64,000 nucleotides of DNA, taken from NCBI RefSeq assembly GCF_021869535.1, contig NW_026262690.1, positions 79,236,001 to 79,300,000 of the forward strand. The letters are read 5' to 3'. Positions 1 through 44,702 of this stretch are shown piece after piece; the stretch's first letter is position 1, and every line of letters starts with the position of its first letter. Source of the DNA: Mytilus californianus (lineage: Eukaryota). The position numbers and the translations under genes are program-made. The notes under the pieces were generated by a model, which saw only the letters and a list, made by a program, of their open reading frames with translations, was not told the origin of the DNA and searched no databases.

Positions 1-296
1 ATCAATATTGTTAAAAACGGGACTAAGAATATTTCGTAAAAGTCATAAGATAAATTCATTTTGTGGTGGACATATTACATTTCGAAGTGTGTACAGTGAT
101 TAGATTCAAGATTCAAGATTCAATATTTTATGAATCTTGATAAGATGAAAGAAATTATGTCCTTTTGTCAAAAAAAAATTTAAATGATCTTAAATATACA
201 CGGCTATCATATTATCCTTGATTATTTTCATTTTTCTTGAAACAAATTAATCGAGATTCTCAGTACAAAAAAATCGAAAATTTCAGGTTTACAAAC

Positions 297-598
297 CTGT
301 CCAGGTCATGTAATCCTCTACAGATCCAAAGAAATTTGTGTTTGGAGTTTGAAAGCTCATATCTGGAATGTATTGTCTTAAAGAAATGTCTTTTAGTGAG
401 CTGAGAGTGCGTACATCAACAGGAAGGTACAAATCTACTTCAATCTCTCCATTTGGTATATCGTATTTAATAACTTTGGATTTGAGTACATTTCAAAAAT
501 CTTCTTTAGTAGCATCTTTTTTTCAATTCATCATACATTTTGTCAACTAAAGCATTTACGTTTTCTTCGAATTCCCAGTTTTTGTATGCAGATGATCC
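297..598 (-). pseudogene. Decayed duplicate of LLTP exon 28
   Basis: Aligns to 16520-16847 including flanking intron; 18-nt and 9-nt deletions plus a +1 A give a frameshift and TAA (GSSAYKNWEFEENVNALVDKMYDELKKRCY*). Confidence 0.9.
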
Positions 599-724
599 CT
601 TTAAAAGAAAACGCAAATGTTGATTTACTTTAATAATATTATATATATATATAATTCAAAATTCAAGAGTCTATCCTAAATTGAGGTAAATTATATGGCC
701 TTCCAAATACCGTTTCGATTCCTA

Positions 725-768
725 ACATCACTGAAGAGACATTAATTGTCGAAATCCGGATATGGTGT
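725..768 (+). ncRNA. Minimal type I hammerhead ribozyme, copy 1 (predicted cleavage after A762)
   Basis: ACATCA-CTGAAGA-GACA(ttaat)TGTC-GAAA-TCCGG-ATA-TGGTGT: intact core, 4-bp helix II, 6-bp helix I, helix III capped by palindrome ATCCGGAT, AUA triplet. Confidence 0.85.
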
Positions 769-1035
769 ACAAAAACCTTTGCACCTTTTGTTTGCGGTAT
801 ATCATCTTTTCCGCCAGTTTATTGTTTTCTGTTTAGTATGCAATTTATAATTAAGATCCATTTATTACATCGGTGATCCGTTTATTTGGCAATCGCCAAT
901 GGCAGTCAGCAGGGTTTAAGAACATTTGTTGTTCGACCTGTTAGTCAAATGTGTTTTGTTAAAATATACTTTTTCACTTTTTTGGTCTTTTGGAAAATGT
1001 TGTTTGTGCTGTATTTAGACCCCTCTAACAAGAAA

Positions 1036-1611
1036 GGAGTAGGTCCGGTAAGGGCCGATTTTTGCTTCAAATTTCGGGTGCATCTGACGAAAGATTTTGG
1101 ACACTTTTTAAACACTTAAGTGTCTATTTTGGTTGATTCTATTAGTTTATGTGAAAGATTTTAACTGATTTACTCATTAAAAACGCTCCGATTCAAGCTT
1201 AAATATGAAAAATCTATCAAATATGCCAAAAATGTCACTTTTCAGATGGTTTTTGCCAAAAATGAAAATGGCCGCATCCGTGTTCATCCTCAACCTTTAT
1301 ATATATTATGTGTTATCATTAAATACAACTTACATTTCAATATCAAGAATGAACACAAATGCAGCCACTTTCATTTAAGACGGAAACCGTCTAAAATTTA
1401 ACTAAAATGCTAAAATTGTGAAGATTTCAGTAACTTAGCATGACTTAATGATGCTAGTTCCCGATATATGTGCACTGTATTGTCAAAAACAGCCCATATT
1501 TATGTAGCAGAAGCATGCTACTTTCCAATAAATAACTAAAAGTTTACATTTTAACAATTTTGTAAAACTGCTTTATTTTGGGGCCAAAAGGGGTCTTACT
1601 GGACTTACTCC
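1036..1611. mobile_element. Spy-like MITE copy 1 (576 bp, no TSD, AAA|TTT target)
   Basis: TIR GGAGTAGGTCCGGTAAG / CTTACTGGACTTACTCC; removing it restores aacaagAAATTTgttttg exactly as at the empty paralogous site 2150-2155. Confidence 0.85.
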
Positions 1612-1840
1612 TTTGTTTTGCATGCACACGTATAAAAATTGCGGTTTTTATCCAACGCAATCATAGGTTTGAACGTTGTTTTCAATTTAGACTTGTTTAT
1701 ATTTTTTCGTTTGGGCTTGTATTATATTTGCCTTCTGGTTTATATGATCCGTTCATCCTATTTCGACTCTTTCAAAATTCAAGAGTCTATCCTAAATTGA
1801 GGTAAATTATATGGCCTTCCAAATACCGTTTCGATTCCTA

Positions 1841-1884
1841 ACATCACTGAAGAGACATTAATTGTCGAAATCCGGATATGGTGT
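1841..1884 (+). ncRNA. Minimal type I hammerhead ribozyme, copy 2 (predicted cleavage after A1878)
   Basis: Identical sequence to 725-768. Confidence 0.85.
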
Positions 1885-2459
1885 ACAAAAACCTTTGCAC
1901 CTTTTGTTTGCGGTATATCATCTTTTCCGCCAGTTTATTGTTTTCTGTTTAGTATGCAATTTATAATTAAGATCCATTTATTACATCGGTGATCCGTTTA
2001 TTTGGCAATCGCCAATGGCAGTCAGCAGGGTTTAAGAACATTTGTTGTTCGACCTGTTAGTCTAATGCGTTTTGTTAAAATATACTTTTTCACTTTTTTT
2101 GGTCTTCTGGAAAATGTTGTTTGTGCTGTATTTAGACCCCTCTAACAAGAAATTTGTTTTGCATGCACACGTATAAAAATTGCGGTTTTTATCCAACGCA
2201 ATCATAGGTTTGAACGTTGTTTTCAATTTAGACTTGTTTATATATATATATATCTATCTATATATATATATATATATAGTTAAACAATACTGATATCTAA
2301 TGGGCATATATATTGTATGGTTGTCACTTGTTTAGAATTGTTTGTATGATATACTTATCTCTAGTGACTGTATAATGAATTGAATCATTATCCCATGGTT
2401 AATAAAAGTTTTTGAGGTAGATTGCTGACAAATGAAATAAAAATACATTGTGTATAACA

Positions 2460-4250
2460 AAACTAGAGGCTCTAAAGAGCCTGTTTCGCTCACCCTGGTC
2501 TATATGCATATTCAACAAAGGACACTCTCCAACATTGTAGACGAGAATAGAATTAATGATAAAAAAATTTTTTTTTTTTATCTTATATTGCTGATCATTA
2601 AAGTCTGTTTAGTTTCTCACTATCTTATTTAGATTTGGTCCAAACACAAAAGAGGGTAAAGAAAAATCCTAATTTAAGGGCAACAATTCCTATAAAGAGT
2701 AACAGTATATACTAATTATATCGGCAAAATTTGACTTGTTAGTAGGTCTTGTCTTGCTTATCATTTTTGATTATTTAAGTTTCTATCTATCTATTATAAT
2801 TTTTATCATATAAGGCAAAACGCAAAAAATATTGTAAAAATCGTCATTAAAGGGCAAGAACTCCAATAAGGAGTCGGACAATTTCCGCCATTTGTCTTAA
2901 TTGTAGATCTTGTCTTGCTGCTCATTTTTGTTCATTTAAGTTTCTTTCTATCTATTATAAGTTTTAAGATATAAGACAAAAACGCAAAAAAAAATTGTAC
3001 GAATCGTCATCAAAGGGCAATAAGGAGTCAACTGACGATTTCAACCATAAGACTTATTTGTAGAACTTGTCCTTCTGATAATTTTTGCATTTTAAAGTTT
3101 CTCCCTATCTATTATAGTTTTCACGATAATAGGCAAAAATGAAAAAAAGTGGTAAAATTTGTCCTTTAAGGGCAATTACTCCTACAGGAAATCGTCTGAC
3201 AGTTTTGACTTATATGGAAAATTGGTAGAGCTCAATATTCTGATCAATTTTACCCTTTTCAGATTTCCTCTATTTTTAACGGTTATCAGAATAATAGACA
3301 TAACTTGTATTTTACCCCATATATTCTATTTATAGCCACGTCGTCCATCTTTGTTGGCAGGCGGGGTCATCGGACACATTTTTTAAAACTAAATACCCTA
3401 ATGATGACTGTGGCCAAGTTTGATTCTATTTGGCCCAGTGGTTTCAGAGGAGATTTTTGTAAAAGATTGCAAAAATTTACGAAAAATTGTTAAAAGTTGA
3501 CTATAAAAGGCAATAACTCCTTAAGGGGTCAATTGACAATTTAGGTCATGTTAATTTATTTGTAGATCTTACTTTGCTGAACATTATTGCTGTTTACAGT
3601 TTATCTATCTCTATAAAAATATTCAAGATAATAACCAAAAACTGCAAAATTTCCTTAAAATTACCAATTCAGGGGCAGCAACCCAACAACGGGTTGTCTG
3701 ATTCTTCTGAAAATTTCAGGGTAAATAGAACCTAACCTAATGAATATTTTAAGATTTGCTCTAAATGCTTTAGTTTCAGAGATATAAGCCAAAAACTGCA
3801 TTTATGTTCTATTTTTAGCCATGTCGGCCATGTTGGCTGGTAAGCGGGGTCATCGGACACATTTTTTAAACTAAATACCCTAATGATGATTGTGGCTAAG
3901 TTTGGTTAAATTTGTCTCAGTAGTTTCAGAGTATCAGATTTTTGTAAAAGATTACAAAAATTTACGAAAAATTGTTAAGAATTGACTATAAAGGGCAATA
4001 ACTCCTTAAGGGGGTCAATTGACCATTTTTGTCATGTTTGACTTACTTGTAGATCTTACTTTGCTGTACATTATTGCTGTTTACAGTTTATCTCTATCTA
4101 TAATAATATTGAAGACAATAACCAAAAACTGCAAAATGTCCTTTAAATTACCAATTTAGGGCAGCAACCCAACAACAGGTCTGATTTGTCTGAAAATTAC
4201 AGGGCAGATAGATCTTGACCCGATGAACAATTTTACCCTGTCAGAAATGG
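2460..4250 (-). mobile_element. Non-autonomous Helitron/Helentron-type element with internal tandem arrays
   Basis: Minus-strand 3' end is hairpin AGGCTCT-TTA-GAGCCT followed by CTAGTT; ~150-160-bp subrepeats at 2670-3260 and two ~480-bp units at about 3310-3740 and 3810-4235. Inner boundary approximate. Confidence 0.55.
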
Positions 4251-5615: not shown

Positions 5616-6193
5616 GGAGTAGGTCCGGTAAGGGCCGATTTTGGCCTCAAATTTCAGGTTCATCTGACGAAAGATTTTGGACACTTTTTAAACACTTAAC
5701 TGTCGATTTCAGTCGATTCAATTAGTTTATGTGAAAAATTTTAACTGATTTGGTCATTAAAAACGCTCCGATTTAAGCTTAGATATGAAAGATCTATCAA
5801 ATATGACGAAAAATGGCACTTTTCAGATGGTTTTTGTCAAAAATGAAAGTGGCCGCATCCGTGTTCATCCTCAACCTTTATATATGTTATGTATTATCAT
5901 CAAATACAACTTACATTTCAATATTAAGAATCAACACAAATGCGGCCACTTTCATTTAAGACGGAAACCGTCTAAAATTTAACTAAAATGCTAAATTTGT
6001 GAAGATTTCAGTAATTTAGCATGACTTGATGATTCTAGTACCCAATATATGTGCATTGAATTGTCAAAAACAGCCCATATTTATGTAGCAGAAGCATTAT
6101 ACTTTCCATTAAATAACTAAAAGTTTACATTTTAACAATTTTGTAAAACTGCTATATTTTGGGGCCAAAAAGGGGTCTTACTGGACCTACTCC
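5616..6193. mobile_element. Spy-like MITE copy 2 (578 bp)
   Basis: Same family as 1036-1611; flanks again AAA (5613-5615) and TTT (6194-6196). Confidence 0.85.
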
Positions 6194-12960: not shown

Positions 12961-13992
12961 TGTCTGTCATACTTGTTTTTCGTAGAACTGTTTTGTTATA
13001 AATTAGGTCGTTAGTTTTCTCAACTGAATTGTTTCATATTTTTCATGTCAGGGTCTTCTATAGCCGAGTATACGGCATGGGTATCGTACGGTTGCCTATG
13101 ATTGCTTACATACACTTCATTTGAACTTGTGTGGATTGTTGTCTCGTTTGCAACCATACAACATCTACTTATATTTGTATTTAGGTCCTTTTTAGGTTTG
13201 ATTAGCTCCCCAAAGTGTTTGATGAATTTAAGATATTCAAATAGTTTGACCTCGAGCATCATTGAAGAGACATAAATTGTCGAAATGCGCACCTGGGGCA
13301 GTGAAATTGATACTGTTTATAAAATTGAGAATGTAAATGGGGAATATGTCAAAGTGACAGCAACCGGACCAAAGAGCAGACAAAGACGAAGGCCACCAAT
13401 GGGTCTTTAACGCAGCGAAAAAATCCCGCACCCGGAGATGGTCCTCAGCTGGCCCCTAAATAAAATTGTGTACTAGTTCAGTGAAAATGGACGTCACACT
13501 AAACTCCAAAACATACAAATGAACTAAACTTAAAAAACATACAAGACTAACAAAGGCCAGAGGCTCCTGACTTGGGACAGGCGCAAAAATGCGTCGGGGT
13601 TAAATATGCTTTTTGAGATCTCAACCCTCCCCCTATACCTCTAGCCAATGTAGAATAAAGAAACACATAGCAATACGCACAGTAAAACTCAGTTTAAAAG
13701 AAGTCCGAGTCCGATGTCAGAATAGGTAACAAAAGAAACTAAGCAAAATGACAATGATACATAAATGAACAAAGGACTACTAGCAGTTACTGACATGTCA
13801 GCTCCAGACCCCACTTAAACTGATTGAAAGATTATGGCTTCATCATATGAAAAACAAGTACAATCTCTCCCGTTAGGGGTTTAGTATCACACCATCATAA
13901 AATATATGAGAAGAACATAACCCGTTTCATGCCAACAACTGGTTTTAGAATAAATGTGTTTATTTCCGATGCAAAGACCCTATGCGTGAATC

Positions 13993-15034: not shown

Positions 15035-16036
15035 TCAACATCTATCTTGAACTTGCCATGCGTTTCCTAGAGCGAAAGCGTCGGATGTAATTTGATTATT
15101 TGGCATAATCATATCATCGTAACGTTCATGGTTTAGAGTACCAAGAAGTCCACCTGTTTTACCAAAGTACCACTTGCTCAAATCAATGTCGACCATATCT
15201 ACGGTTGGATCGGATTTAACTTGGAATCCACGACCCTCAATGAACACCTTACCATCGACAGAGAAAACTGCAAATTCTGTTGATCTGTAAGGTAGATCCA
15301 TAACTACACCATCGACACTGACCTACAAGAGAGAACGTATAATAAGGTGAATCCTTTTGTTATAATTCAAAAGCAAAAACACAATCATGTACATGCAAAA
15401 TGCAAATGTCTAGTTGAGTCATACAGTTATTATTTTGTACATAAATTAGGCCGTTAGTTTTCTCGTTTGAATTGTTTTACATTTTTTATTTCGGGGCCTT
15501 TTACAGCTGACTATGCGGTATGGGCTTTGCTCATTGTTGTATGGGGACCTATACTTGTTAATGTCTGTGTCATTTGGTCTCTTGTGGAGAGTTGTCTCAT
15601 TGGAAATCATACCACATCTTCTTTTTATATGCAGTGTAAACCTTACTGCCATTTTTCAATCATCACAATTTGATAATCTTTTCACTACTTATACATACAT
15701 CATATTTTAATTTTCTCAATGGAGTCTTGCAAAGAATATTCTCGACATAAATTTGTGGATAAACACAAAATATTTCATGTATATTGTAAATATAAAAATT
15801 GATTAATATTCCTCATATGTAAAGAGCTATAGTTACCTTTCCATTTGGTGATAATTGAACATTTTGTTGGTGAGAAGTCAAGATCAACTTCTTCTTTTGT
15901 CTGCCCAAATAGTTCATGATGATACTGAAGTTGCCGTCTACATAGTCTCGTGCAAGAACGTAGCTACATCGCCCACTGAAGTCAAATTCTTGACCATCGA
16001 AAGTTGTAAAGTGTCGGCCATGTACTTTTGCACTTA
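15035..16036 (-). CDS. LLTP exons 29-30: von Willebrand factor type D domain and stop
   Basis: HGRHFTTFDGQEFDFSGRCSYVLARD; WYFGKTGGLLGTLNHERYDD...NAWQVQDRC then TGA at 15035-15037. Confidence 0.92.
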
Positions 16037-19000
16037 CTGTAGAAATTATATTAAATATACAATTATTCTTTATTTTTATAATAAAGAAAATAGTTTTTAA
16101 AAACATACAATTTAATAGAAAAAACATGTAATTGTATTATCATTCTATAATTTTTTTGCTAATTTTTACATGTTTGTTTAGTATGATATATAAATAACAA
16201 TTCTTTAAAAAACCCTAAGTAGAAGAACGAAAACTTTGCGACTAAATACAAAAAGACAAAGAGTGTTAACAAATATCTGCACATTCAGGAATTTGCATTT
16301 TTTCGTAAAAGTCATAGTGTTACCATTAGATAAAGCCATTTTGTAGTGGAAATACTCCATTTCCAAGGGTGTACAGTGATAAGATAAAAAAATATTATGT
16401 CCTTATTTCAAAAAAAAAATTTATATATGCATTATCACAACATCCTTGTTTGTCTTCATTTTTCTTAAAAAAATTTAAACGAGGTTCTCAGTACAAAAAT
16501 TCGAAAATTTATTACAAACCTGTCCAGGTCATGTGTGGCATGTAATCCTCTAAAGATCCAAAGAAATTCAGTTTTGGAGTTTGAAAGCTCATATCTGGAA
16601 AGTATTGTCTTAAAGAAATGTCTTTTAGTGAGCTGAGAGTGCGTACATCAACAGGCAGGTAAAAATCTACTATAATCTCTCCATTTGGTATATCATATTT
16701 AATAACTTTGGATTTGAGTACATTTCCGAAAACCTCTTTTAAAACAGACATCTCCTTGGTAGCATCTTTTTTCAATTCTTCAAATATTTTGTCAACTAAA
16801 GCATTTACGTTTTCTTCAAATTCCCAGTATTTGTATGCAGATGATCCCTTCAAAAGAATATGTGAATGTTATTTTACTTTAAATATCATATATATATATA
16901 TATAAATGTTGTTACTTTAATATATCTTTGTATATTTAATATCTTTTTTCAGTTTTTCACTTTTGTTCAAGCAAATAATAACATTTATGCTATTAAAATT
17001 TAATTTCTTATCGGTCTTACCCCTTAATCAGTAAATAATTTTCGTAACATTTTTAAAAAATCAGCCACTCAAATCAATGAACACAAACTTATACCTACCA
17101 TGTTGTACATTGGTGTCGGTAACGAGTTGACAAGTCTTTGGTTGATCCCCTCTCTGATGTTGTATATGCTTGATGTGTATTGGTTGGCAATGCTAGACCA
17201 TTGCTCATTTAATTTCATATTTTTAAGCTGATCCATATAAGTGTTATATTTCGATTTTAAATTGACAACAGTTTGGTGATTTCCAACAGAGTTTTTGTAA
17301 TCTGAAATTATAAGATTTTATATAAATATAAATATATATAGATGTATAAGCAAAAAAAAAATACAAAAGTTAATTTATATAGTTCCTTTGTATAAAAGAC
17401 GAAACTATTTTTTCATGTGAACTTACATCAACAATGTTTTGTTGTTGATGATTTTCTGATTTTAAACACTGTGACGAGTTTATGATCAAATCTGCAATGT
17501 AAGGCTTATTACGTAGTACGCTGCACGCAGCTTTCGTCTGCTTAACTCTTATTTGCTGTTATAAAACTTTGAAATCATTTTAAACAAAGGAATATATCTC
17601 CCTCATGAAAGCTCTCATTCCTTGTCCGGATTTGGCTATACTTTACGTCCTTTACGAGTGTAATAAATTGAAGATTTTCAAATATGTTGGTCTCGAGTCT
17701 CACCGAAGAGACATTGTCGAAATGTGCATCTGGTGCAGTAAAATAGATACCGTTAATGTTATAACAAATGATTAAACTTTCTATATACAGAAATACCTAA
17801 TACAATTTCCTTTTTGACTTAAAATTTATTTTGTAAGTTATCCCCTGAATTTAATTTAATAAACTGAGGTATTCAGTAGATAACAATTACCCAGTAATCT
17901 CTGATAAGAATTTGTTGTAATGCTGTTTAACTGGCCACCCATGTTGATATAAGTATCTTTGGAATAGGCATCCAGTCTCTGAAACATAAAAGTAACAGTG
18001 TAAAATAAAGCTTCTGACAATTTGCAGGTAATCCAAATAAATTTCATAAGAAAGTCGTTTTTGTGACATTTTCGAGTATACTGTGTTTAAGTTGTATACA
18101 AGTTAGTGACACATCTCCATTAATCCGGATAGGATGTGTACACGGATTCAACTGTACCCTCAGCTGTCGAGGGTGCTCCGAATAACGGAGGGATCTACGC
18201 TTATACATACGTTGACAATTTCTGATTGTTCTTACATGCAGAAAGGAATCATCTGGAGTACGAACAGATTTTCAAAGAGTTTATTTTTAATTGTGAAAAG
18301 TAAAGAAATTTAACTAATAACACCAGCCAAAAATGTTTTATCGTCTCTTTATCGTTTATACCAGGTTTTGGGGTTTCAAATAGTTTGAACACGAGCATCA
18401 TTGAAGAGACATTGACGAAATGCATAGCTGGTGCAGTAAATTTGATACCGTTAAAATTATTACAAACCTGTTGTAGCTGTTCAAGACTGTTCATGTATTC
18501 ACCAATTTTATGTTTGACTGGCCATCTCCCCCAAGCTTCATTACAATCTTCTGCAAATTCACTAAAACAATAAAAATAAATATGTTGTTACACTTGTGGC
18601 AGTCTTTAAGCAATTTAGTTCATCTGTATTCTTCGATACTCTAACTGCTATTTAGTCTTTAAAGTTTGGCCACAAAATTCATAAACTAAATTAAACAACT
18701 TTTTTCGAGTGAGATAAAAACGTACCCGATTCTTGTCATGGTAGTATCAACAGAATTACAAATGTCTTGAAGATAAAAGGCATTGTCTGCTTTCAATGTT
18801 CTGAGTTCAGACAGTTTGTCATTGATGGCATCAGCATATGATTTGACTTCTTCTGCATAGGAAGCTTGGAATAATCGTCTCTTGTATAATATTTCTTTGT
18901 TAATTTCATCAGAAGACGCTTCAATTGCCATACCAGATCTTATGCCATATTCTTCAATTCGTTTTGTTAGTTCAGCCTGAAAGATGTACGAACTAAATGA

Positions 19001-22000
19001 AGTTTGCTAATTCTTTGAATGTTTCAAAAAACAATTTTTCATAATGTTGATGGTTAATACTGCATAAACAGAAAGCAAACTGAAGCGGATGTGTATGTCC
19101 ATAAGGCTTAGCTTCCACTGGAGTGGAATACCATACAAAAATGAACTGTTTCTATTTTCATTTGCAACTTTAACATTCTGGCATGGTTTGTGTCGCTCAT
19201 ACTTTTTTGTACGACATCATTGACTTTTCACCTGTCTTTTTTTTTTAGGTTGGTAGTGGTTTTTATGGTGTTCAATATCTTTCTTATTCTTACGGTTCCT
19301 GTTTACCCCTGTCATCTTTTTGCTCCTATCTCTATAAGACATTAACTACACTAAGGGAATGATTTATAAGACATTTCTTCATATGCAAAATTAGCCTCTG
19401 TTCCATGTTCGCTATCTATAAATAACTGATATATCTGAAAGTTGTTGAAAAAAATTACAAATATACCTTGAGATCACTGATAATTGATGGACGCCAGTGA
19501 ACACGTGTATGAAGAATCTTGGATGTTTTTAATCGGAGATTAAGCAAGCTGTCTACAGTTTTCTTCTGATTTACATTTCTGTACAGTTCTGCAGATATTC
19601 CTTTCTCGTCAGAGAATTTAGCATTCACATGGAGTGTATTGTCTGGGTTTTCTGAAAATAGACAGATCAAGAATTTAAATTGAGGGAATTTTCTGTAAGA
19701 AAAGAATATAAGGTATCACTTTAAACCATTCAACTTAAAAAAAAATGATTACTCTATTTATTCAATTATTGAACGCTTATTTTTGATTTTTGCATCTAAA
19801 GTGCAACTTAATAAGGAAGGATGACTTACTGATATCATAGTTCATGTTGAAATCCAGGCTACTATCATTAGGGTCAACTGTCAGCTCTGTATTGATTGGC
19901 TTGGTATCATCATAAAGATTTTTGATTGTCAGTTTGAAAGGTGATGTCTCAACACTAGCATCCATTTTCATTGTTTTGATTGGAGAAAGAACCTGTGGTA
20001 CAAAATTCAAAGATTAAAATTCGGGGTTAACTTTTCACTTGATCATTCATTGATAGTATATTCAAGTAGATTTTCAGTAAGAAGTTTCACTTCATATACG
20101 GAAACACAAACTCATAAAATAAATTTTTTTGATTAGTGTTTTTGTTTTTTTCCTTTATTCAACCAGTATGGAAGAAAATGAACAGAAACATATTCACACA
20201 ATATAAGTTTATATTTATATCTTAAGTCTAACTAAGTCAATACCTGTATATTCAGTTGACGTTTGAGTTTATCAATCTCGGTTATTAAAGCGATGTTCTT
20301 TGTTTGACGTCTTGCAGTCAGGTATTGGATATCAAAACCAGCTGAGAGTTTGTCGTCAGATTTTCCGAATATTGCCTTAGTTTGAATGTCCACGGTAGTA
20401 TATGGGTGACTTATACCAAGTAAGAACTTGTAATCCTCCCCACGTCCTGATACATCTTCTAATTTTGAACTCAATGTAAAAGTTTTACGTGAATCTTTTG
20501 AGTATCTGAATGCTGTACGGCCATCATAAATAACGTTTCCATATCCAATTAACATTTTGTAATCAAGTTGGATATCCTATAAAATACCAAGAACACTATT
20601 ATTAAACTGCATGCAGGAGAAAATAAAATAAGAAAATAAATGAAACTGTATTTTTTTTGTAAATAAATTTCAGTGCCTTCGAGTAATTTTGATCTGTACT
20701 TAAATATTTGTGCCATAGAATAGACTGTAAATATTATATGATTAGATAACTAACAATACAGATGGTTTAAATAATTGAATCATTAGATTTGCTGCAATAC
20801 AAAAGATACTAATGTAGTATCGAGTTTAAACATTCTACATTATTCTTTATATACCATATGTTCTTCAAAAGCCATTAGAATTTACCTTTTTTAATATCGT
20901 ATTTTGATAACTTAAATTATTGTTTTCTTTTTTTGAAAAAAAAATAATAAATATTTTTAAATTACCTTCCCGAGACTTGGCATTTCTAAACCCAATGTAA
21001 GTTCATCTCCATTAGTTCTGGTATTTTTTGTAGTCCTCATTGCTACTCTTTTGTTTTGGTCTCTCTCTGCATCCCACGAGAAATCGAATACTTGACTGCT
21101 TATTCCATATCCTGATGATGATACAGTTGATAATACAACTGTCCTAGATGGTAGCTGTAGAGTGTATTTTTCTTGTCCGTTGTTTTCGTGTATTGTTTCA
21201 AATCCATGTGTTCTGACATCATCTTTCTCTATAAATAGAACAATTTTGGACGAATCATCAGGACGGTGATACGATGCCCCAATGGCGTAAGATTTAGACC
21301 CGCACACACCTCTATAGCTAGCAATCTGTTTCCTGTCAGACCAGTCTGAATTGTATGTAATGTCCATTCTGCACCTGCTGTCTCTATCTAGCTTGTTCCA
21401 ATTTACAAGCATGTATGTTTCTGAGGAGAACAGTTTATTTATTTCAAACCTCATTAGTCTCGGTTCATTGACATTAATTATCAGTGTTATTTCCTCTCTT
21501 TTCTCAGCATCCATTTCGAAATCAACATCGTACAATGTTTCTTTGTTGATTTTCATATTTGTTGCTACTATCAAATGATTTGTTTGGCTACGCCAGTCGT
21601 ATTTTACATACCCGTAAGCAGTTCGAAGAGATTCCCAAGGAGTAGACACTGACAGTGAGGAGTCTGTTTTAGTGAGAGACGCATCTATAGTTATTCCGTT
21701 GCGCTCAGTGAAAAATGCTTCAATGTGGGATTTTAATTCTCCAAGATTTTTTTCATTTTTCATGGACATTCGTATATTTCTCAAATTATTTAATCCTGTT
21801 TTAAGTGTAAGAGATCCATCTAACTCATCGAACCGGTTGCCAGTTAGGCGTGCATCAAAGTCAATTTCAGGTAGGTATGATGTCTGTATATTCAGTGCAG
21901 CATGGTATGGTTTTCTTGATGCAGATGCTTTAACCTGTGTTCTCTTATATCCTCGGATTGGTGTTTCAAGATTAATGCTGAATGAGGATAGAGTTTTTTC

Positions 22001-25000
22001 CATGGCAAGAGTAATCTTTTTTCCTCCATTTGCAGCATTTCCGGACAGTGAGTAGGTGTCGCCTTGCGTTTTCATGTCTGCGTTGACGGAGTATCTGCTT
22101 TGCGGTGTATTCAAGGAAATATCGATCATTTCTTGTGTTATTTTGAGGTTTCCGTTAATTAGAGGATTGTTTTCACTGAGCGTCAAATATGCAGATGATA
22201 TGAGACTGGTTGCTTTCAAATCATGACGATATCTACCGTTCAAATGAGGAATTGCGGTGAGTGGAGTTTGGAGATCGACATTTAAGTACAAACTTTCTGG
22301 TCGATACATTGTGAATCTAGCATTTCCTTCCATCTTTTTGTCTGGTGCATATTGAAGACTTCCGATTGTTGTGAAAGACTTCAGAGATCCAGAATGTTCA
22401 ATCTTGATATTAACATCTTTTAGTTTCTCAAATGGTGTTTGGAAGCTTAGTGAGCCCTCGATAGATGGAAGGTGTTTAAAGGATGCATCTGCTTTGATTG
22501 TCTGGTCGTCATATTTCGCCTCAATGTTTGTTTTAAAGCTTGAAATGTAACCATCATGTGAAATTCTAAGCTCAGACAGTTTAACATTTCCAGATAAAGT
22601 GGTTTTCAGTGTTGCGTCGAAGTCTACAAACATTTCTCCAAGTCTGACCCTTGTTACTTCTTCAATTGCATTCATGTTACCAATGGATGCCTTCACTGTT
22701 GTTCCGAAGGACTTCAGATTTCCGTTTACGCCATATTCTATTTTGATGTCTTCTATAATAGGTGTTAATAGCAGCATGTTCCCTTTGATTGCAATTGAGG
22801 ACCACTCGTGATTGACTTCTCCTCTAACTCCTTCTTTTCCATAGCTAACAGACGATTCGTATCGGAATGCATGCAGATCTCCATTTCCGTTGATAATCAC
22901 TTCAAAGTCTTCCGTTAGTGGTGTTTTTAGACACAGCTCGATTTTCAAACCAGTTGATGTATCAACTTTGCCATTAAGTTGAGTTTTATGTTTTCCAATT
23001 TGCGCGACTGCCTTTCCAGAAATGAGAGATTGCACATTTGAAAATGTCAGTGAAACCTTATTTCTTTCATATTCAGTAAAAGGTGTCTCCAACGTAATTT
23101 CAAGTCCACTAGCAATATCAAGATTTGTTTTTGCCTTGATTTCCTTGTCATTCAGGGTCAATTTGATATTTGAATGGAAATTATTCAATGTACCTTGGAG
23201 TTCGTGGGAAACAGATGCTTTCATGTTTCTGAAAGGTAATTGTATGTCGATATTCATGTCTAAACCATTAGTTAAATCAATGGAGATATCAGATGATAAT
23301 GCCTTTCTGTTGTATTTGAAAAGACTGAATGATTTTAACTGTTCGTCAGACTTTGTTTGTTTCATGCTAGCTGTAACTTCATGTTGTTTTAATCCGCTGT
23401 AAGATAGTTCAGCTTGTGAATCCCAGTTGAAGTCAAATATATTTCCACTTTTTTTAATAATAACTATAATGTCATCAAAATATGGCAGTTTTAGTGTAGC
23501 TTTGCCATCAACATCTTTTCTGGTATCTGCAGAAATGTCGATAGATAGTTCCTTACCATTATAAGCTGTTTTACCGTTTGCTGCAAAATTGCGTATTTCT
23601 CCATTAAGATTGAAGTCTGCTAATAGTTCATGTTTTTCGTCACCATACTGAAGCTCAGCTTTGGTATTGAAGTTTTTGAATTCTCCATCTAAGGAAACTT
23701 CTAGTTGAATATCCTTCGATATTGGCGATTGAAGGGCCATATTTGCGGATAATTTTGAGGTAGTGTCAATGTCGACAGTTAGAGCAGTTCTTTTATTATT
23801 GTATTGAACTTCACCAGATACTTGGAATTGTCTAAGTGTGCCGCTACGTTTAAATGTCGAAACAAATTCATGTTGTTTACTTCCACTGTAGGTTGCACTT
23901 GCTTGTGATCTGAAATCAGTTGAAGTACCTTGATGGTCAAGGAAGATTTCAATATCCTCAGTTAAAGGTGTTGACATACGTCCCTTTAATTTTAACCCAC
24001 GAGTAAAATCGGTTTCAACTGAAGTGGTGACTCTCTTGCCATTATACGTAGCGTCTCCCGAAAACTGGAATTTTTGTAGTGCACCAGACCCTTTAAATGT
24101 TATGACGGCTTCATGTTGTTTGGATCCACTATATGAAATGTCAGCGTGTGACTTGAAATTACTAGCAGTACCTTTATGGTCAATTATAATTTCTATGTCG
24201 TTGGTATATGGAGTTATCAAAGTGCCCTTTGTCTTGATACCTTCTGTTGAGTCGAATTGTAGTTCTGATGACACTCTCTTGGAATTATAAGATGCTTCAC
24301 CTGAAGTTCTGAAATTTGTCATGTCTCCATTATGCTCAAATGCAGCATAAAGTTCGTGTTGTTTCTTTCCGCTGACGATTATTTCTCCCTTCGTATTAAA
24401 GTTCAACAGCTCCCCTCTATGGTATACTTTCAATTCGATATCTTTTGTGTATGGACTTTTGATTATAATTTTGCCTTTTATTCCTGTAGATTGCTCTAAT
24501 GTTGCTTCTATTGATGCTACCTTAGTGTTGTATGACATTTCTACAAATACTCTATTGTCACGATTCTGGAGTTCAATATTGGCTTCATGCTGTTTTCTGC
24601 CGTTGTAACCAATCTCTCCATGACTGATGAAATTATGTAGAGTACCTTGATGAGAGAAAGAAACTGTTATATCATCAGTGAAGGGTGTTCTTAAAGTAAC
24701 TGCTCCCTCGGGATCGTTCAAGATATCGAAATCCACATCACTCGAAATCTTTTTACTGTTGTAAGTTATTGACCCCGCAGACTGGAATTTTCTTAATTCG
24801 CCCTCAAATTTGAAAACTGTAATTACCTCATAAATTTTAGACCCTTCATATATCACATGAAATTGATTGCTAAAATCGATCAATTTACCATTGTGTGAAA
24901 ATGATACACGAATGTCTTTGGTCATAGGAGTGTTCAATGAAAATGAGGATTGAACTCCATTTGTACTATCAAATGATACTGATGCAGTTACTCTCTTTGT

Positions 25001-28000
25001 ATTGTAAACAATATTGGAGCTGGTGGAAAATTTCTTAAGTAATCCATCGTGATTAAAGGTAACAGAGATTTCATGTTGTTTGCGACCATTGTATGTAAGA
25101 TCAGCTGTTGTTCGGACGCCAAAGTTGTTTCTCTGTTCATTGTTGGTGTTGAACAAAAGTGAAAATGATACTGGTTCACTTATTGGTGTTTCAATTCGCC
25201 CAGTTGCTTCAATCTTTTCTTGTATTCCATTTGGTGCGCTGAACGAGAATTTTCCAGTAACCTTTTTCTTATTGTATGCACCGTCAAAATTTGTTTTCCA
25301 TGTTTTGATTGACCCTTCAACATTGAATGAAATTTCAAGTTCGTGTTGTTTCTGTCCACTGTAAGTAAGCTGGGATACGGATGTAAAGTCCACCAGTTGT
25401 CCTGTGGTCTCAGTACTAATAACTACATCACGTGAAAATGGAGATTTCAAGAAGCCGTTTATTCTGATATCTCTTACCATATCCACTGATACCTGGGCAG
25501 ATCCTGTCTTGTAACCGTAACTCAATTCACCACTAGATAAGAACCGTCTTAATTCTCCTTCATGATTTAACTTAAGAGTGACATCTTCAGAGTATGGCGT
25601 TTTCAAGAAGGCCCTTGCATTGAGACCTCCAGAAGTTCTCAGTGTTAGCTGTCCTTCTGATCTCTTTCCATTTTGTACATATTCACCTGAGCATTCAAAG
25701 TCTTTCAACTGTCCAGAATGTTTGAATGAAATTTCTGCAGTACGGAACATTGCATATGGAGTCGTCAGTGTGGCTCTTCCTTGAATTCCATTTTTGCTTG
25801 TAAATTTTGCTATTCCATTGATCTTTTTGGAATTGATGTCTATGTCTGCTGTGCTCTCGAAGTCATTTAGTTGTCCTTTATGGTTAATATTCAGTTCTCC
25901 TGACCTCAAAATATCGAATGGTGTTTTCAAGTTCAGTCGAACTGAAAAGTCATCTGTAATACTAAGATTTAGATCTACTTGTGCTGATTTTCTTCCATAT
26001 GCACCTTTGATGTTTGAAACACATTGTTGAAAGTTCCCGCTGTGTTCAAAGGATACTGACATGTCAGGTGTAAAGGAGGATATAAAAGTAGCTTCTCCTT
26101 TCATTCTTGGTTCCTTTTGATACGAAATTATGCTGTTAATAATATCTTTTCTTCCATATGTAATTGAAATTTGGTTTTTGAGGGATGACTCAAAACTATG
26201 CGATAACGACATCTTTACAGGTTCATATTTGGGAGTAAGAAGAGTAAGTTTTCCTTCAATTGGACCAAGACTAGAGAATGAAATGTCCAATTGACTTCTT
26301 TTCCTTTGAAGAAGTGTTTCTAATCGAGAGGCAAAATTATTAGATGTTCCTGAGTGCGAAAGTTTGGCTGTCATTTCTCCATATTCCTTGAATGGTGTCT
26401 TGATATCAACAGAAACAGTCAATCGGTCATTTGTGCTGACAGATGTATCTAGTGATATAGTTTTAGAATCAGAGTAAGTTATTTCAGCTTTAGTCTGGAA
26501 GTTGCTTAGCGGCCCAACATGGCTAAGTAACGCCTTTAGATTGCCATACCTTTTCACCGGTGTTTGAAGAGTTGCAGATAGAACCAATGGTTGAGATGAA
26601 AATTGCAAATCACCAATAATGTCTTTCTTGTTCTTTGTAACTTCCAGATGACATTTAAAGTCAGAAAGTTGGCCGTTGTGCGTATAGGAGGCTCTCATCT
26701 TTTCATATCCGTCATGAGGTGTGTTGACAGTAAGCTCTGTTGATAAAGTTGGATCAACGTTTGATTTTACATTAGCACCCCAAACATTTTTTCCAATTTT
26801 AAATTCGGCCTGACATTTGAAGTTGCGTAAATTTCCTTCATGTGATACAAAAGCTGACATTTTTCTGATGCTCTTGAAAGGTGTGGATATTGAAATGTCT
26901 GTCTTCAGATTTTTGATAAAGTTGAATGTCAGGTCTCCTTCAATTTCCTCCTTCTTTCCCCATCCAATCTTTGCTTTTGTCTTGAAGCTTGTACTTTTGC
27001 CTTTGTGTACCAAGAGAACTGTGATATCATCCATGATGGGAGATACAACTTTTAATGTTCCTTTCATTCTTTTGGAATTTGTCATTTCTATGTCTACATT
27101 GATTGGCTTATTCTTCCCGTATTTTAACAAAATGTTAGAATTAATGCTTTTTCTATTTCCACTATGAGAGAAGGAAGCAAAGGTATCTTCAACCAGAGAC
27201 GACTTCATAGTGAATGAACCTTGGAGGCTTTTTCCATTATGGAAACTGATATCCAGTTGATGTTTGCCATTTCTGTCATACTGCAAGGAAGCCCCAGATA
27301 AAAATTGATTCCATGTTCCTTTGTGGCTCAAAGAAGCGGTTACTGGATGGTAATTAGGAAGACGTATTGTGACTGAAGAGTGGTAGTTTTCTCTGTATTC
27401 AACAACAAGCTCAGCATAGTAGGATTTCCCCTCTGGATACTCCATTTCGACTTCCGTTATGCATCCTTTAACGGTTGGGTCATGTGTTATACTGGCTGTT
27501 AAACGTTGTAATTTTTCAAAAGGAGTTGCAATACTGACATCAGCACTTAGCTTTTGTCCATCTAAAAGAGTTCTGGATGTCAATGATACGATCTTTCCTG
27601 GTAAGTACTCAACCTTGATATCGGTTCTCGATTTGTCATTCTCAGGGCGGTTTGAGAATGTTATTTCACTGGATGGAAGTTGTTGGTATTGGGTTTCGAG
27701 TCTTACATTACCGGACACACCCCCAATTCTGTTGAATGTAGACAAGAGTCGAATTCTTCTTACAATTGGTTGTAGTTCAAAGCTGACAGAGGAGGTCATT
27801 GACTTCATGTTTCCTTCAAATTCCATCTCTGTTCTAAGTCTTCTAAATGATTTAAATGGAGTAGATAATGTGATCAAAACATATTTCTGGGATCCTGTTT
27901 TCAATCGTCCTTCTAGTGCAACCATTTGTTCACCTTTAAGTAGGAGGTTCCCAGTAGCAATGAGTTCCCCATTTTCAGTTTTAAGATGACCTTCACTTGT

Positions 28001-31000
28001 AAATAGGTTTTTGCTATTTTGGCTCATCGAGAGAATGGTGTCCATGGAACTGTCTTTATGTAAATGACTAACCATAAGTTGTCCCTTTCCAAATGGAGTT
28101 GCGGAGGTCAATGTATACTGGATGGATGCTTCTTTCCATGCAAGATTATGTCTGCCCTTAATGTTAAAGGCATATTGCTGTCCATTCATGTTGGTTGTGA
28201 TCACTGTTGTTACATCATTGAGTGTATTACTGTGTTGCCATGTAGAATCGTATCGGCTTGTTGGTGAAGATAGAGTTATTTTACCGCTCTGCTGAACCAT
28301 AAGACCTGCTCTGTCATGTGTGAGTTTACCTTCATATCTGTATTCGTTTCCATTAATATTTAGAACAAGACTGTTTTCGTTAGTTTTATCCCGACTTTGG
28401 TGACTAAGATCTAAAGAAACGGCTTGGATGGATCGAATGTTAGATTTGACCCCAGCATGTCCTGAGTATATGTTGTTTTCCTTCTTTGCAGATGCATCAA
28501 ACTGTAAAGAATTCTTGTTTACCTGAACATTTACAAAGGACTTCAGCGAGTCTTTTGCATCATGAGAAATTTCCAGGAACGATGTTTTGAATCCCTTTAA
28601 TGGTGTCTTGAGGTTGAGAGATCCTTGGAATTGACGAATGCTAAATGGCTTTTTTAGTGAAAATGCAGCCGATATTTGGTTATCTGGTTTCCAGTTGACA
28701 TCAAAGTTTGTTTTATATTGACGGGGTTCTGACAAATGGTTCATTCCAAGTTTAACATAACTTAATCCTTTTACTGCAGTATGTACTGTTAAGCTTCCAT
28801 CGATTTGGACTTGATCTTTACCATATTTTTGTTTTAAAGATGCATCAACAGATAGTTGTTCTTTTCCGTCGGATTTTATGTCACAATGTGCATTTTCGTT
28901 TTTGCGATTGATGTTGATCTTGTTATTTTGCAGTGGACTCTTGAATACAAGGACAGCATCAATTTCGTTCTTGGTTTTGTATGTCAGTTGAGTGTCAAGA
29001 AATATTTGTTTTTCCTTGTCTACATTAGCATCCCATTGAATGTCCAAATGTCCAACGTAGATTGGATCCTTCTTCTTTGCTTCGAATTCACCTTTGACTC
29101 TCCTTGAGGGCACAGATACATCACCAGAAAGTCGTAGAAGTGCTGCTTTTTTGTATTGAGAACCAAATTCTGCCGAATAGTCATTATTAAGTCGAGATTT
29201 GACACGGAAGTTTCTAGGATCCAGGTTGAGCAGTGCTTCTAGATGGATTGGCTTCTGCCCGGACATACTAATGTCAGTGCTGACGTCATACTCTTCATCA
29301 GAAAGTTTAAGATCACTTACAACTTTTGTTTTGTGTCCAGCAATATTTGAGATCAACTCATTTGTGTATCTTCTTTTGTTCTTCTGTTCGAAGTTGTTTG
29401 CAATTGAAAAGTCTTTATCATTCCATTTCAGGCTAACATCACCAGTTAAGGCTGTAAATTTTTTGGACTTATTCTTCACTACCAATGCAGCGGATACTGA
29501 TTGCTTCTTGCCGTATGCTAACCCAAAGTTAGAAACAATACTCTTTGTGTTGTGAGAATGCTTTCCTTTCAGTTTAAGATCTAATCCCTGAAAGTAGCAA
29601 TATGATTATAACATTATTTCCAAATATTCTCAGGTACAAAAATATTTCAAAATGTTGAAGCATTTGATTTTGAACAACTCAAACATTATCAGATTTTTGA
29701 AAAGTAGGAATCAGTCTTCTAGTATGCCAAGTGTTATGTGCCATCTTGATTATTTACTAATTTCAATCGAGTATTAATACATGTAAATAAAGGCAACAGT
29801 AGTATACCGCTGTTCGAAATTCATAAATCGATTGAGAAAAAAACAAATCCGGGTTACAAACTGAGGGAAACACATCAAATATAAGAGGAGAGCTGAGTAA
29901 TTTGCGTTCAGAAATAACTTTTAATTATGGTACAATCTTGGCCTTGGAGGTCCTGCGCTTTCCCAATACATAACTATTTCCTTAATCACTATCACTGAAG
30001 GGTGATTCAGACTTGTTTATTTAAAGAAAATTGTACTTCAAAAGTGACAGGAGTCTGAAATTCAGTTGTTGTCGTTTGTTACTGTCTGTCATAATTGTTT
30101 TTTGTTTATTTGTTTTGTCTAGAATAAGGCAGATGGTTTTTTGTTTGAATTGTTTCACATTTTCTCATGTCAGGGGCTTAAATCCACTTCATTTGGACTC
30201 CGATGGATAGTTGTCTAATTGGCAATCGTACCATATCTCCTTATTTTATATTGATATAATATTTTGTATGTCATTGCCTCTTTGATTCCCAAAACTGACC
30301 AGCATTTAGCTTCGTGAATATATATTAACTTAAGTTAAAATTGTGACAATGCAAAGGAAAACTTAAGCATATAATCGTATTTTAGCTTATGGTTGTCTTA
30401 CCAGAGCCAGATGTCGAATATCGCCAGTTATATCGATATCAGATTTCTTTAATCCCAGCTCGTGACGTACTAATGATGTAACAAAGATGCGCTTGTTTTC
30501 ATCTTTTGGTTTTGCACCATATTTTAGGTCAAAGTTCACTTTTGTCAATCTCTGTTTGTTGTTCATGTCTGTGTTGATTACAACATTATAGTCATTGTTC
30601 TTCTTGAAAGCTAAAGATCTGTTAATATAACAATAGCATTATATATTGTTTTCCCTTCTAGTTCAATAATTGCATTCCTTGTATTTGATTCCGGGTACCA
30701 CTGACGAGAAATTCTTTTCGAAACGCAGTTATGGTGCATAACATAAACTTATGTGTTTAGCAATCTTATATTAGAGACAATATTTATGGTTGAAATTAAC
30801 ATGCGATTTATTGTTTGCAGAATATTTCATGTATTAAATGATGATTTATGTAAATAAAATTGTCAAATGTAATAATTCTTGACGCTGGACATAAACATGA
30901 TTGCAACTTTTGATTGAACTGTCAAGTATATCAATACGTTAAATGAATAACTCACAAAAATAAGGGACAGACTCTATATACCACATTAACCGAATATTCA

Positions 31001-44336: not shown

Positions 44337-44659
44337 CTACCCCAGAGTTCAAAGTGACATTTAACTAATGAATTTTGATATGTAATTAATGCTGACATAT
44401 TTGGGACTTTGTAACCGTGTCAATCATATTTTATCGAGATATATTTACGCATGTAAATGTTTGTGTTTTTTGTTTGTTTGTAAAAGTGTAGGTCGATGTA
44501 CTATTTGATTTTGATATGTACACAGTTCATTTAGATATGATGAACTATTTTAAAAATGAATTATTATAGGAAATATAAAAATTTGACTTTCATATGAAGC
44601 TTTATTTGGTGATCTTCAACTTTGTACTTTATTTGGCCTTTTTAACTTTTTGAAATTGA

Positions 44660-44702
44660 GCTTCACTGATGAGCCTTTGTAGACGAAACGCGTGTCTGGC
44701 GT
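44660..44702 (+). ncRNA. Degenerate Penelope-type minimal hammerhead motif
   Basis: GCTTCA-CTGATGA-GCCT(ttgt)AGAC-GAAA-CGCGT-GTC-TGGCGT; core intact, one mismatch each in helices I and II. Confidence 0.6.

What the first reader, a model, noticed from the sequence alone, without database searches (positions are those of the whole stretch)
655..2243. Retrozyme-like tandem element with two intact, dimerisation-ready hammerhead ribozymes
Seen: two identical motifs (725-768, 1841-1884) with full core CUGAAGA/GAAA, a 4-bp helix II, a 6-bp helix I, an AUA triplet and a helix III reduced to 2 bp around the palindrome AUCCGGAU. They sit at the same position in a near-identical, non-coding ~1.9-mer repeat whose cleavage-to-cleavage unit is 540 nt without the MITE. 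Known: minimal type I HHRs with palindromic helix III occur in Penelope-like elements and act as dimers, and metazoan retrozymes (reported in Mytilus) are HHR-bearing tandem repeats that yield small circular RNAs. Inferred: a young, possibly undescribed retrozyme family; a transcript across both copies could self-cleave in cis and release a 540-nt monomer (1,116 nt in this MITE-carrying copy) able to circularise.
Basis: partly seen in the sequence, partly recalled or inferred. Interest (0 to 1): 0.88.

Follow-up and report, generated by a model that had tools for sequence, protein, structure and literature searches.

The report
Mussel hammerhead retrozyme, 540-nt family
This is one young insertion of a small non-coding mobile element that carries a self-cleaving hammerhead RNA motif; elements of this kind (retrozymes) are already known in mussels, so it is a new family of a known type, not a new kind of thing.

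Summary
Two identical 44-nt type I hammerheads (725-768, 1841-1884) have a complete catalytic core, a 6-bp helix I, a 4-bp helix II and the palindrome AUCCGGAU. They sit in a non-coding 1.87-unit repeat of 540 nt (655-2243), split by a 576-bp MITE and flanked by (TA)n. The motif is not chance: 0 hits in 300 shuffled windows, and a full-length Rfam Hammerhead_1 alignment (22.4 bits, below the gathering score).

I recovered 11 related insertions from mussel-derived ENA contigs and one JGI contig. They share one sharp 3' end. Their 5' ends are either variably truncated or run on for more than one unit. Eight of the 11, and the window's own copy, lie in or next to (TA)n. These are footprints of target-primed reverse transcription as in Penelope-like elements.

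The hammerhead is intact in the young arrays and far better conserved than the rest of the unit. A sister family in the window shows compensatory changes in helix I and in the palindrome.

It is therefore a non-LTR retrozyme (non-autonomous Penelope-like element). It differs from the published 350-390-bp Mytilus families, a relic of which lies at 44.6 kb. First readers of this scan noted 537-544-bp arrays elsewhere in this genome. Circular RNA is untested, and the monomer is not unusually structured.

The parts
640..654 (.). (TA)n microsatellite, 5' flank of the insertion (target site)
   Evidence: Read. The paralogous segment 16301-16900 has (TA)n at the same position and no element.
655..1035 (+). 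Upstream, 5'-truncated copy of the unit, first part (lacks the first 68 nt of the unit)
   Evidence: 100%/99% repeat with 1771-2152. Unit boundaries come from the family's shared 3' end.
725..768 (+). Hammerhead ribozyme motif 1 (type I); predicted cleavage after A762
   Evidence: identical to the copy scored by Rfam.
1036..1611 (.). Later insertion of a 576-bp MITE with imperfect terminal inverted repeats, at AAA|TTT without target duplication
   Evidence: The empty site is preserved at 2150-2155 in the second copy. A second MITE copy at 5616-6193 (93%) also sits at AAA|TTT.
1612..1702 (+). Upstream copy, last 91 nt, ending at the point that is the 3' terminus in all family members
1703..2243 (+). 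Full-length unit (541 nt) ending in ...TTTAGACTTGTTTATAT
   Evidence: The same 3' end is found in L001-L005 and L008-L010.
1841..1884 (+). Hammerhead ribozyme motif 2; predicted cleavage after A1878
   Evidence: Rfam Hammerhead_1 over model 1-45/45, 22.4 bits.
1908..1932 (+). Small hairpin downstream of the hammerhead (UUGCGG...CCGCCA), with one pair that is C-G, U-G or U-A in different copies
   Evidence: RNAalifold and the alignment. Weak: one pair, five sequences.
2100..2243 (+). Best-conserved 3'-terminal block of the family, including the stem AUUGCG/CGCAAU at 2179-2202. Candidate recognition region for the reverse transcriptase (inferred).
   Evidence: Family alignment.
2244..2277 (.). 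(TA)n-rich 3' flank of the insertion

Best explanation
655-2243 is a single, young insertion of a roughly 540-nt non-coding retroelement that carries a type I hammerhead ribozyme. It belongs to the non-LTR retrozymes, that is, non-autonomous relatives of Penelope-like elements (PLEs). Shown: the family has one fixed 3' end (...GACTTGTTTATAT); its 5' ends are variably truncated or run on for more than one unit across the 3'-end/5'-start junction; it strongly prefers (TA)n targets; and its hammerhead is kept intact in the young copies. Inferred mechanism: tandem copies are transcribed, and two hammerheads pair through the palindrome AUCCGGAU to form a double hammerhead. Cleavage after the AUA (or AUC) triplet then releases 540-nt monomers with 5'-OH and 2',3'-cyclic phosphate ends, which a host RNA ligase can circularise. 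A PLE reverse transcriptase/GIY-YIG endonuclease supplied in trans nicks a (TA)n tract. The nicked DNA end anneals to the UAUAU at the unit's 3' boundary and primes cDNA synthesis. Synthesis stops early (5'-truncated copies) or continues around the circular or multimeric template (copies longer than one unit, such as this 1.87-mer). This copy was later hit by a MITE, so its own cleavage-to-cleavage product would be 1116 nt. Whether this copy is transcribed is unknown.
For: Hammerhead: the motif is complete and not chance and aligns full-length to Rfam Hammerhead_1. RNAcofold of two 44-mers gives the double hammerhead with an 8-bp intermolecular helix III at -24.7 kcal/mol. The lone monomer instead misfolds at -8.1, and the monomeric hammerhead fold scores only -2.1.
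Family: a spurious ORF within the unit retrieved 18 ENA 'proteins'. Their contigs L001-L010 and the JGI contig L011 hold copies at 73-94% identity. Eight insertions that are followed by flanking DNA end at unit position 469-473, and the decayed L006 copy ends near 477. Their 5' ends lie at 65, 237, 251, 352, 358 and 360, or the copies run beyond one unit: the window 1.87, L008 1.12, L006, L007, and L011 at least 2.13 units of 573 nt. Eight of the 11 fetched insertions, and the window's own copy, abut (TA)n or TA-rich tracts. L004 has an approximately 8-bp target duplication, AAGGACAT. A paralogous segment of the window has the (TA)n but no element.
Hammerhead conservation: it is intact in both window copies, both L011 copies and L007. 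Its only changes there are in loop 2 and at H17 (A or C). Hammerhead identity is 43/44 and 42/44, against 79-82% for the rest of the unit. A sister hammerhead module in the window (13222, 17663, 18375) shows compensatory changes at the outer helix I pair (A-U to G-C) and in the palindrome (C-G to G-C).
Age: units within young insertions are 99.2-100% identical, while separate insertions are 81-93% identical.
Literature: PMC7229834 describes type I hammerheads in AT-rich tandem repeats as non-LTR retrozymes expressed as circRNA, including in Mytilus. PMC4209133 describes palindromic helix III and dimeric action. PMC8557442 describes partial tandems, 5' truncation and (TA)n bias in PLEs. bioRxiv 10.64898/2026.07.22.740005 reports retrozymes related to PLE pseudo-LTRs, with consensus lengths of 51-972 bp.
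Against: There is no expression, cleavage or circular-RNA evidence for this family or this copy. The 540-nt monomer is not more stable than dinucleotide shuffles (z -0.2 linear, -0.3 circular), whereas published retrozyme circRNAs are described as highly self-paired. The Rfam score is below the gathering threshold. No autonomous PLE with a matching 3' end was found, and the few large ORFs I scanned in the window showed no reverse transcriptase. In longer context the MFE prefers an alternative hairpin that sequesters the GAAA core. Copies were fished with an ORF lying in the 3' half of the unit, so 3'-truncated copies could not be seen. L002 and L005 share flanking sequence and may not be independent. 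Hammerheads of this dimer-dependent architecture cleave slowly in vitro (PMC4209133).
Confidence: 0.8

Rival explanations
1. The unit is not a dedicated non-autonomous family. It is the terminal repeat (pseudo-LTR), or an internally deleted remnant, of an autonomous Penelope-like element. On this reading the hammerhead is the ordinary PLE hammerhead, and short 3' fragments are simply 5'-truncated PLE copies.
For: PLE pseudo-LTRs carry hammerheads, and PLE insertions are partial tandems with 5' truncation and a microsatellite bias (PMC8557442, PMC4209133). The short copies L001-L005, L009 and L010 would look the same under either reading. The 2026 preprint finds retrozymes to be sisters of PLE pseudo-LTRs.
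Against: In the window, L008 and L011 the sequence closes on itself after 540-573 nt with no ORF. No gene called on the 10 ENA contigs has a reverse transcriptase or GIY-YIG Pfam hit. L011 is a pure array of at least 2.1 units.
Confidence: 0.12
2. It is a SINE-like element mobilised by a LINE rather than a PLE, and the hammerhead is a passenger with no role in mobility.
For: A fixed 3' end, 5' truncation and target duplications also fit LINE-mediated target-primed reverse transcription.
Against: There is no poly(A) or LINE-type 3' repeat. Copies longer than one unit that read through the terminus are typical of PLEs and retrozymes, not SINEs. The (TA)n bias is reported for PLEs (PMC8557442). 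The hammerhead is better conserved than the rest of the unit.
Confidence: 0.05
3. It is a local tandem duplication or satellite with a hammerhead-like motif that arose by chance or is a dead relic. Nothing was retrotransposed and nothing is cleaved.
For: Only two copies are present at this locus. The monomer RNA shows no excess structure. The Rfam score is sub-threshold.
Against: There were 0 motif hits in 300 shuffles. Dispersed copies with a shared 3' end occur in other contigs and samples. Compensatory changes are seen against the sister family.
Confidence: 0.03

Closest known systems
Non-LTR retrozymes of metazoans (Cervera and de la Pena 2020, PMC7229834), including the Mytilus galloprovincialis 350-390-bp families with hammerheads HHR A and B
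   Same: Non-coding, AT-rich (34% GC) tandem repeats with a type I hammerhead in every unit. Helix III is short and palindromic, implying dimeric action. They co-occur in the same genome: a relic of the published Mg353 type lies at 44613-44703, and an intact one is in L008.
   Different: The unit is 540-573 nt, not 350-390. The hammerhead sequence differs (CUGAAGA-GACAUUAAUUGUC-GAAAUCCGGAUA against CUGAUGA-GUCUUUUGUAGAC-GAAACGCGCGUC). There is no similarity outside the motif. The monomer shows no excess folding energy. No circRNA data exist.
Penelope-like elements (Neptune, Poseidon, Hydra, Naiad; PMC8557442, PMC4209133)
   Same: A partial tandem made of a 5'-truncated copy followed by a full copy, variable 5' truncation, insertion into (TA)n, and a hammerhead in the repeated part. 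Possible short terminal 'tails' are seen in L001 and L009.
   Different: There is no reverse transcriptase/GIY-YIG ORF, and the whole unit is 540 nt. The hammerhead has the canonical 6-bp/4-bp helices, not the min-HHR form described for many PLEs (helix II of 7-8 bp, helix I of 4-5 bp).
Newt satellite 2, Schistosoma Sm-alpha and axolotl retrozyme hammerheads (Rfam Hammerhead_1, RF00163)
   Same: The same architecture, with a loop-less palindromic helix III. The motif aligns full-length to the model. Published axolotl and newt motifs cleave much better as dimers (PMC7229834).
   Different: The palindrome is AUCCGGAU and not ACGCGCGU, and the cleavage triplet is AUA or AUC and not GUC. The score is below the family's gathering threshold.

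Membership tests
Hammerhead ribozyme, type I (Rfam RF00163) | Conserved core C3 U4 G5 A6 N7 G8 A9 ... G12 A13 A14 A15.1 ... U16.1 H17, with the G10.1-C11.1 pair | tested here: met
   All positions are present at 731-737, 738/750, 751-754 and 761-762, and again in the second copy.
Hammerhead ribozyme, type I (Rfam RF00163) | Covariance-model score at or above the curated gathering score (34 bits) | tested here: not met
   22.4 bits, E 0.0011, full-length alignment over model 1-45/45 on a 96-nt search. No hit at gathering score on the whole window.
Hammerhead ribozyme, type I (Rfam RF00163) | Helices supported by compensatory change | tested here: met
   Against the sister module in the window, the helix I outer pair changes A-U to G-C and a palindrome pair changes C-G to G-C. 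92.7% of cells are paired, against 15-42% when the partners are slid. This amounts to only two events.
Hammerhead ribozyme, type I (Rfam RF00163) | Self-cleavage at H17 | not testable with these tools
   Needs in vitro transcription of monomer and dimer constructs.
Non-LTR retrozyme (PMC7229834) | Type I hammerhead in each unit of a head-to-tail repeat, from dimers to multimers | tested here: met
   The window holds 1.87 units with two hammerheads. L011 holds at least 2.13 units with two intact hammerheads 573 nt apart.
Non-LTR retrozyme (PMC7229834) | Non-coding, low GC (<45-50%), no LTR, primer-binding site or polypurine tract | tested here: met
   33.7% GC. The longest open frame is 66 codons. 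The unit closes on itself without terminal repeats.
Non-LTR retrozyme (PMC7229834) | Dispersed multi-copy family with signs of retrotransposition (target duplications longer than 4 bp when present) | tested here: met
   Eleven related insertions with a shared 3' end; an approximately 8-bp duplication in L004.
Non-LTR retrozyme (PMC7229834) | Monomer RNA highly self-paired | tested here: not met
   MFE -106.3 (linear) and -102.4 (circular) kcal/mol, z -0.19 and -0.27 against 100 dinucleotide shuffles.
Non-LTR retrozyme (PMC7229834) | Expressed as monomeric linear and circular RNA | not testable with these tools
   No transcriptome access.
Penelope-like element (autonomous) | Single ORF with a telomerase-like reverse transcriptase and a GIY-YIG endonuclease | tested here: not met
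   No ORF in the unit. It is therefore not an autonomous PLE.
Penelope-like element (insertion style) | Partial tandem with a 5'-truncated upstream copy, variable 5' truncation, microsatellite target bias | tested here: met
   compared with the description in PMC8557442.
Penelope-like element (non-autonomous derivative) | Sequence similarity of the unit's termini to a coding PLE of the same genome | not tested

The most novel reading that the evidence does not exclude
The family records in genomic DNA how retrozymes move. cDNA synthesis always starts at one UAUAU site, by microhomology with a nicked (TA)n tract, and then runs a variable distance round a circular 540-nt RNA, giving anything from 0.2 to more than 2 units per insertion. 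Because (TA)n is the reported target of the hammerhead-less Naiad PLEs that dominate bivalve genomes, this hammerhead element may parasitise a PLE clade that has no hammerhead of its own.
Probability: 0.25. Interest if true: 0.6.

Novelty: new member of a known kind. Interest (0 to 1): 0.35.

Why it matters
Retrozymes are a recently recognised route to abundant circular RNA in animals, and how they are mobilised is still only inferred. This family adds a third, longer, sequence-distinct hammerhead retroelement to the mussel genome. Its copies show unusually clean footprints: a fixed 3' junction at a TATAT motif, (TA)n targets, and graded 5' truncation that continues past one unit. These could be used genome-wide to test the rolling-circle reverse-transcription model and to identify the autonomous partner. 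For this locus the practical result is an annotation: a young retrozyme insertion, later split by a MITE, next to a decayed paralogous exon of a vitellogenin-like gene.

Tried and rejected
1. Rfam at gathering score and the 1.7-kb E-value scan gave no hammerhead. The only hits were spurious miRNA-like matches to the long hairpin inside the MITE. The multiple-family E-value hides a 22-bit hit, which a 96-nt search recovered.
2. An exact-pattern scan with the window's loop-2 variant found nothing in JGI metagenomes or IMG/VR. Relaxing one loop position found L011.
3. Looking up earlier findings by sequence or with many words returned nothing.
4. A literature search for strings of this hammerhead gave only unrelated primer matches. 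A bivalve-plus-retrozyme search added no new paper.
5. I tested the idea that the monomer is a rod-like, highly paired RNA. It was not supported.
6. Using the paralogous segment at 16301-16900 as an empty site only partly worked. Homology stops inside the (TA)n, so only the pre-existing microsatellite is shown.
7. A Pfam scan of the larger ORFs looking for a PLE reverse transcriptase in the window found only vitellogenin domains.
8. Gapless searches with longer stretches of the published Mg353 sequence failed because of indels. Shorter stretches matched.

Full report
**What is there**

The sequence shows a 540-nt non-coding unit present 1.87 times between 655 and 2243.
- 655-1035 plus 1612-1770 is one period. 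It matches 1771-2243 at 99.2% (3 substitutions, 1 indel).
- The first period is split by a 576-bp insert (1036-1611). A 93% copy of that insert lies at 5616-6193.
- Both flanks of the whole block are (TA)n.
- The unit is 33.7% G+C. Its longest open frame is 66 codons.

**The hammerhead**

725-768 and 1841-1884 are identical. They read: ACAUCA / CUGAAGA / GACA-UUAAU-UGUC / GAAA / UCCGGAU / A / UGGUGU.
- Every conserved core nucleotide is present, including the G10.1-C11.1 pair.
- Helix I is 6 bp and helix II is 4 bp.
- A15.1 to U16.1 form the 8-nt palindrome AUCCGGAU, followed by A17.

A descriptor requiring these features finds only these two sites in the 64-kb window, and none in 300 dinucleotide-preserving shuffles scanned on both strands.

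Rfam gives nothing at gathering score or in a 1.7-kb E-value scan. On a 96-nt search, Hammerhead_1 aligns over its whole length (model 1-45/45) at 1841-1884 with 22.4 bits and E 0.0011, against a gathering score of 34. The Rfam consensus itself has a loop-less palindromic helix III. PMC4209133 states that most metazoan type I hammerheads have a 6-bp helix I, a 4-bp helix II and a 1-2-bp helix III capped by a palindromic loop. The architecture is therefore the ordinary animal one and implies action as a dimer.

RNAcofold of two 44-mers returns the double hammerhead with an 8-bp intermolecular helix III at -24.7 kcal/mol. A lone 44-mer misfolds at -8.1, and its monomeric hammerhead fold is worth only -2.1.

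**Is it a family?**

The tools offer no search of the assembly, so I used the translation of a spurious 54-codon ORF inside the unit (2062-2226, minus strand) as bait.
- It retrieved 18 'proteins', all from one ENA assembly, ERZ6864376. I fetched ten of their contigs (L001-L010).
- These contigs are mussel DNA. L008 also carries the exact hammerhead of the published Mytilus galloprovincialis retrozyme Mg353 (compared with the supplement of PMC7229834).
- A relaxed hammerhead pattern found one JGI metagenome contig, L011.

BLAST and alignment of the unit against these loci show:
- **One shared 3' end.** Eight insertions followed by flanking DNA stop at unit position 469-473 (...TTTAGACTTGT[T/A]TATAT), which is window position 2243. 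The decayed L006 copy stops near 477.
- **Variable 5' ends.** Starts lie at 65, 237, 251, 352, 358 and 360.
- **Copies longer than one unit.** Some read straight through the 3'-end/5'-start junction: the window (1.87 units), L008 (1.12), L006, L007, and L011 (at least 2.13 units of a 573-nt variant filling the contig).
- **Target preference.** Eight of the 11 fetched insertions, and the window's own copy, abut (TA)n or TA-rich tracts. L004 has an approximately 8-bp target duplication.
- **A pre-existing microsatellite.** The window's left flank (32-653) is an 82% paralogue of 16301-16900. That segment has a (TA)n at the same spot and no element.

Caveats: the bait lies in the 3' half of the unit, so 3'-truncated copies could not be seen. 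L002 and L005 share flanking sequence and may not be independent.

**What this means**

A fixed 3' end, graded 5' truncation, partial tandems with a truncated upstream copy, and a (TA)n bias are the insertion style described for Penelope-like elements (PMC8557442). Type I hammerheads in AT-rich non-coding tandem repeats define the non-LTR retrozymes. These are known in Mytilus and expressed there as abundant circular RNA (PMC7229834). A 2026 preprint links retrozymes to PLE pseudo-LTRs and reports consensus lengths of 51-972 bp.

The block at 655-2243 is thus best read as one insertion event: a copy lacking its first 68 nt (655-1702) followed by a full copy (1703-2243). The two halves differ at 4 of 473 positions, so the insertion is young, and the MITE arrived later. 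Units within the young insertions (the window and L011) are 99.2-100% identical, whereas different insertions are 81-93% identical. This fits copying from a single monomeric (circular) or homogeneous multimeric template.

**Is the hammerhead maintained?**

- L011 (both copies) and L007 keep it intact. The only changes are in the middle of loop 2 (A, U or C) and at H17 (A or C), the two positions where change is tolerated.
- L004 has G5U. L008 and L006 are decayed.
- Hammerhead identity to the window copy is 43/44 (L011) and 42/44 (L007), against 79-82% for the rest of the unit.
- A sister module of about 100 nt occurs three times in the window (13222-13326, 17663-17757, 18375-18458), all decayed. 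Compared with family A it shows compensatory changes at the outer pair of helix I (A-U to G-C) and inside the palindrome (C-G to G-C). Overall 92.7% of cells are paired, against 15-42% when the partners are slid. These are two events only, but they fall exactly where the model predicts.

**What is not supported**

- The 540-nt monomer, linear or circular, is no more stable than shuffled sequence (z -0.19 and -0.27). It does not share the 'highly self-paired' property reported for retrozyme circRNAs.
- In longer context the minimum-energy fold pairs an upstream CCGUUUCGA with the GAAA core. This may be an off-state or may mean nothing.
- Cleavage, circularisation, transcription of this copy and the identity of the autonomous partner are all untested.

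**Comparison with what is known, and novelty**

The published Mytilus retrozymes are 350-390 bp, with hammerheads of the form CUGAUGA-GUCUUUUGUAGAC-GAAACGCGCGUC. A decayed relative lies in this window at 44613-44703. The family studied here shares nothing with it outside the hammerhead core. Strings of its hammerhead were not found in the searchable literature.

It is therefore a new family of a known kind. First readers of this scan have flagged arrays of 537-544-bp units with hammerheads on other pieces of this genome. I could not check those notes, but they agree with a multi-copy family.

**Verdict**

Interest is moderate-low (0.35). The most useful by-product is the clean set of insertion footprints, which could test the rolling-circle model genome-wide.

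Noticed in passing
window 1036-1611 and 5616-6193: Two copies (93%) of a 576-bp MITE with imperfect terminal inverted repeats (GGAGTAGGTCCGGTAAG...). Both are inserted exactly between AAA and TTT without target duplication, and the empty site is preserved at 2150-2155. An internal long hairpin (about 1240-1396) produces spurious plant-miRNA hits in Rfam. From my own knowledge, TSD-less insertion at AAA|TTT recalls Spy-type transposons.
   Followed up: partly
window 13222-13326, 17663-17757, 18375-18458: Three decayed copies of a roughly 100-nt sister hammerhead module. The inferred ancestor is GCAUCA-CUGAAGA-GAC..GUC-GAAAUGCGCAUC-UGGUGC. C3 is mutated to U in two of them, and helix II is shortened in two. 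All lie within the span of the vitellogenin-like gene.
   Followed up: partly
window 44613-44703: Relic of the published Mytilus galloprovincialis retrozyme (Mg353 type; supplement of PMC7229834). Its hammerhead has lost helix II pairing (GCCUUUGUAGAC).
   Followed up: partly
window 30694-30740: Another hammerhead-like motif (CUGACGA-GAAAUUCUUUUC-GAAACGCAGUUA-UGGUGCA) with a 6-bp helix I but an imperfect helix III. Probably a decayed PLE or retrozyme hammerhead.
   Followed up: no
window 15035-36930, minus strand: A large lipid-transfer (vitellogenin/apolipophorin-like) gene. Vitellogenin_N and open beta-sheet domains lie at 36178-36930, a single 2842-codon ORF at 20957-29485, and a vWD-like exon (my reading of the translation) near 15035-15301.
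   Followed up: partly
window 32-653 vs 16301-16900: An 82% paralogous duplicate that includes a frameshifted copy (289-616, minus strand) of the exon at 16512-16853. The retrozyme array starts about 40-60 nt from what reads, by eye, as that exon's 3' splice site, in antisense orientation. Homology ends inside the (TA)n.
   Followed up: partly
window 709-717 with 749-759 (and 1825-1833 with 1865-1875): An upstream CCGUUUCGA can pair with UCGAAAUCCGG of the hammerhead core and palindrome. This fold wins in the MFE of longer transcripts and is conserved in L007 and L011. It may be an inactive conformer, but there is no covariation to support that.
   Followed up: no
L009 5' flank and L001 3' flank: Tiny extra fragments resembling the element's own 3' end (cagacttgtatatat, aacttgtttacatat) lie next to the insertions. 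They recall the short 'tails' described at PLE insertion ends.
   Followed up: no
window 2660-4233: Further unrelated tandem repeats just downstream of the array: roughly 160-nt units at 2733-3696, and a roughly 483-nt duplication at 3320-4000 and beyond.
   Followed up: no
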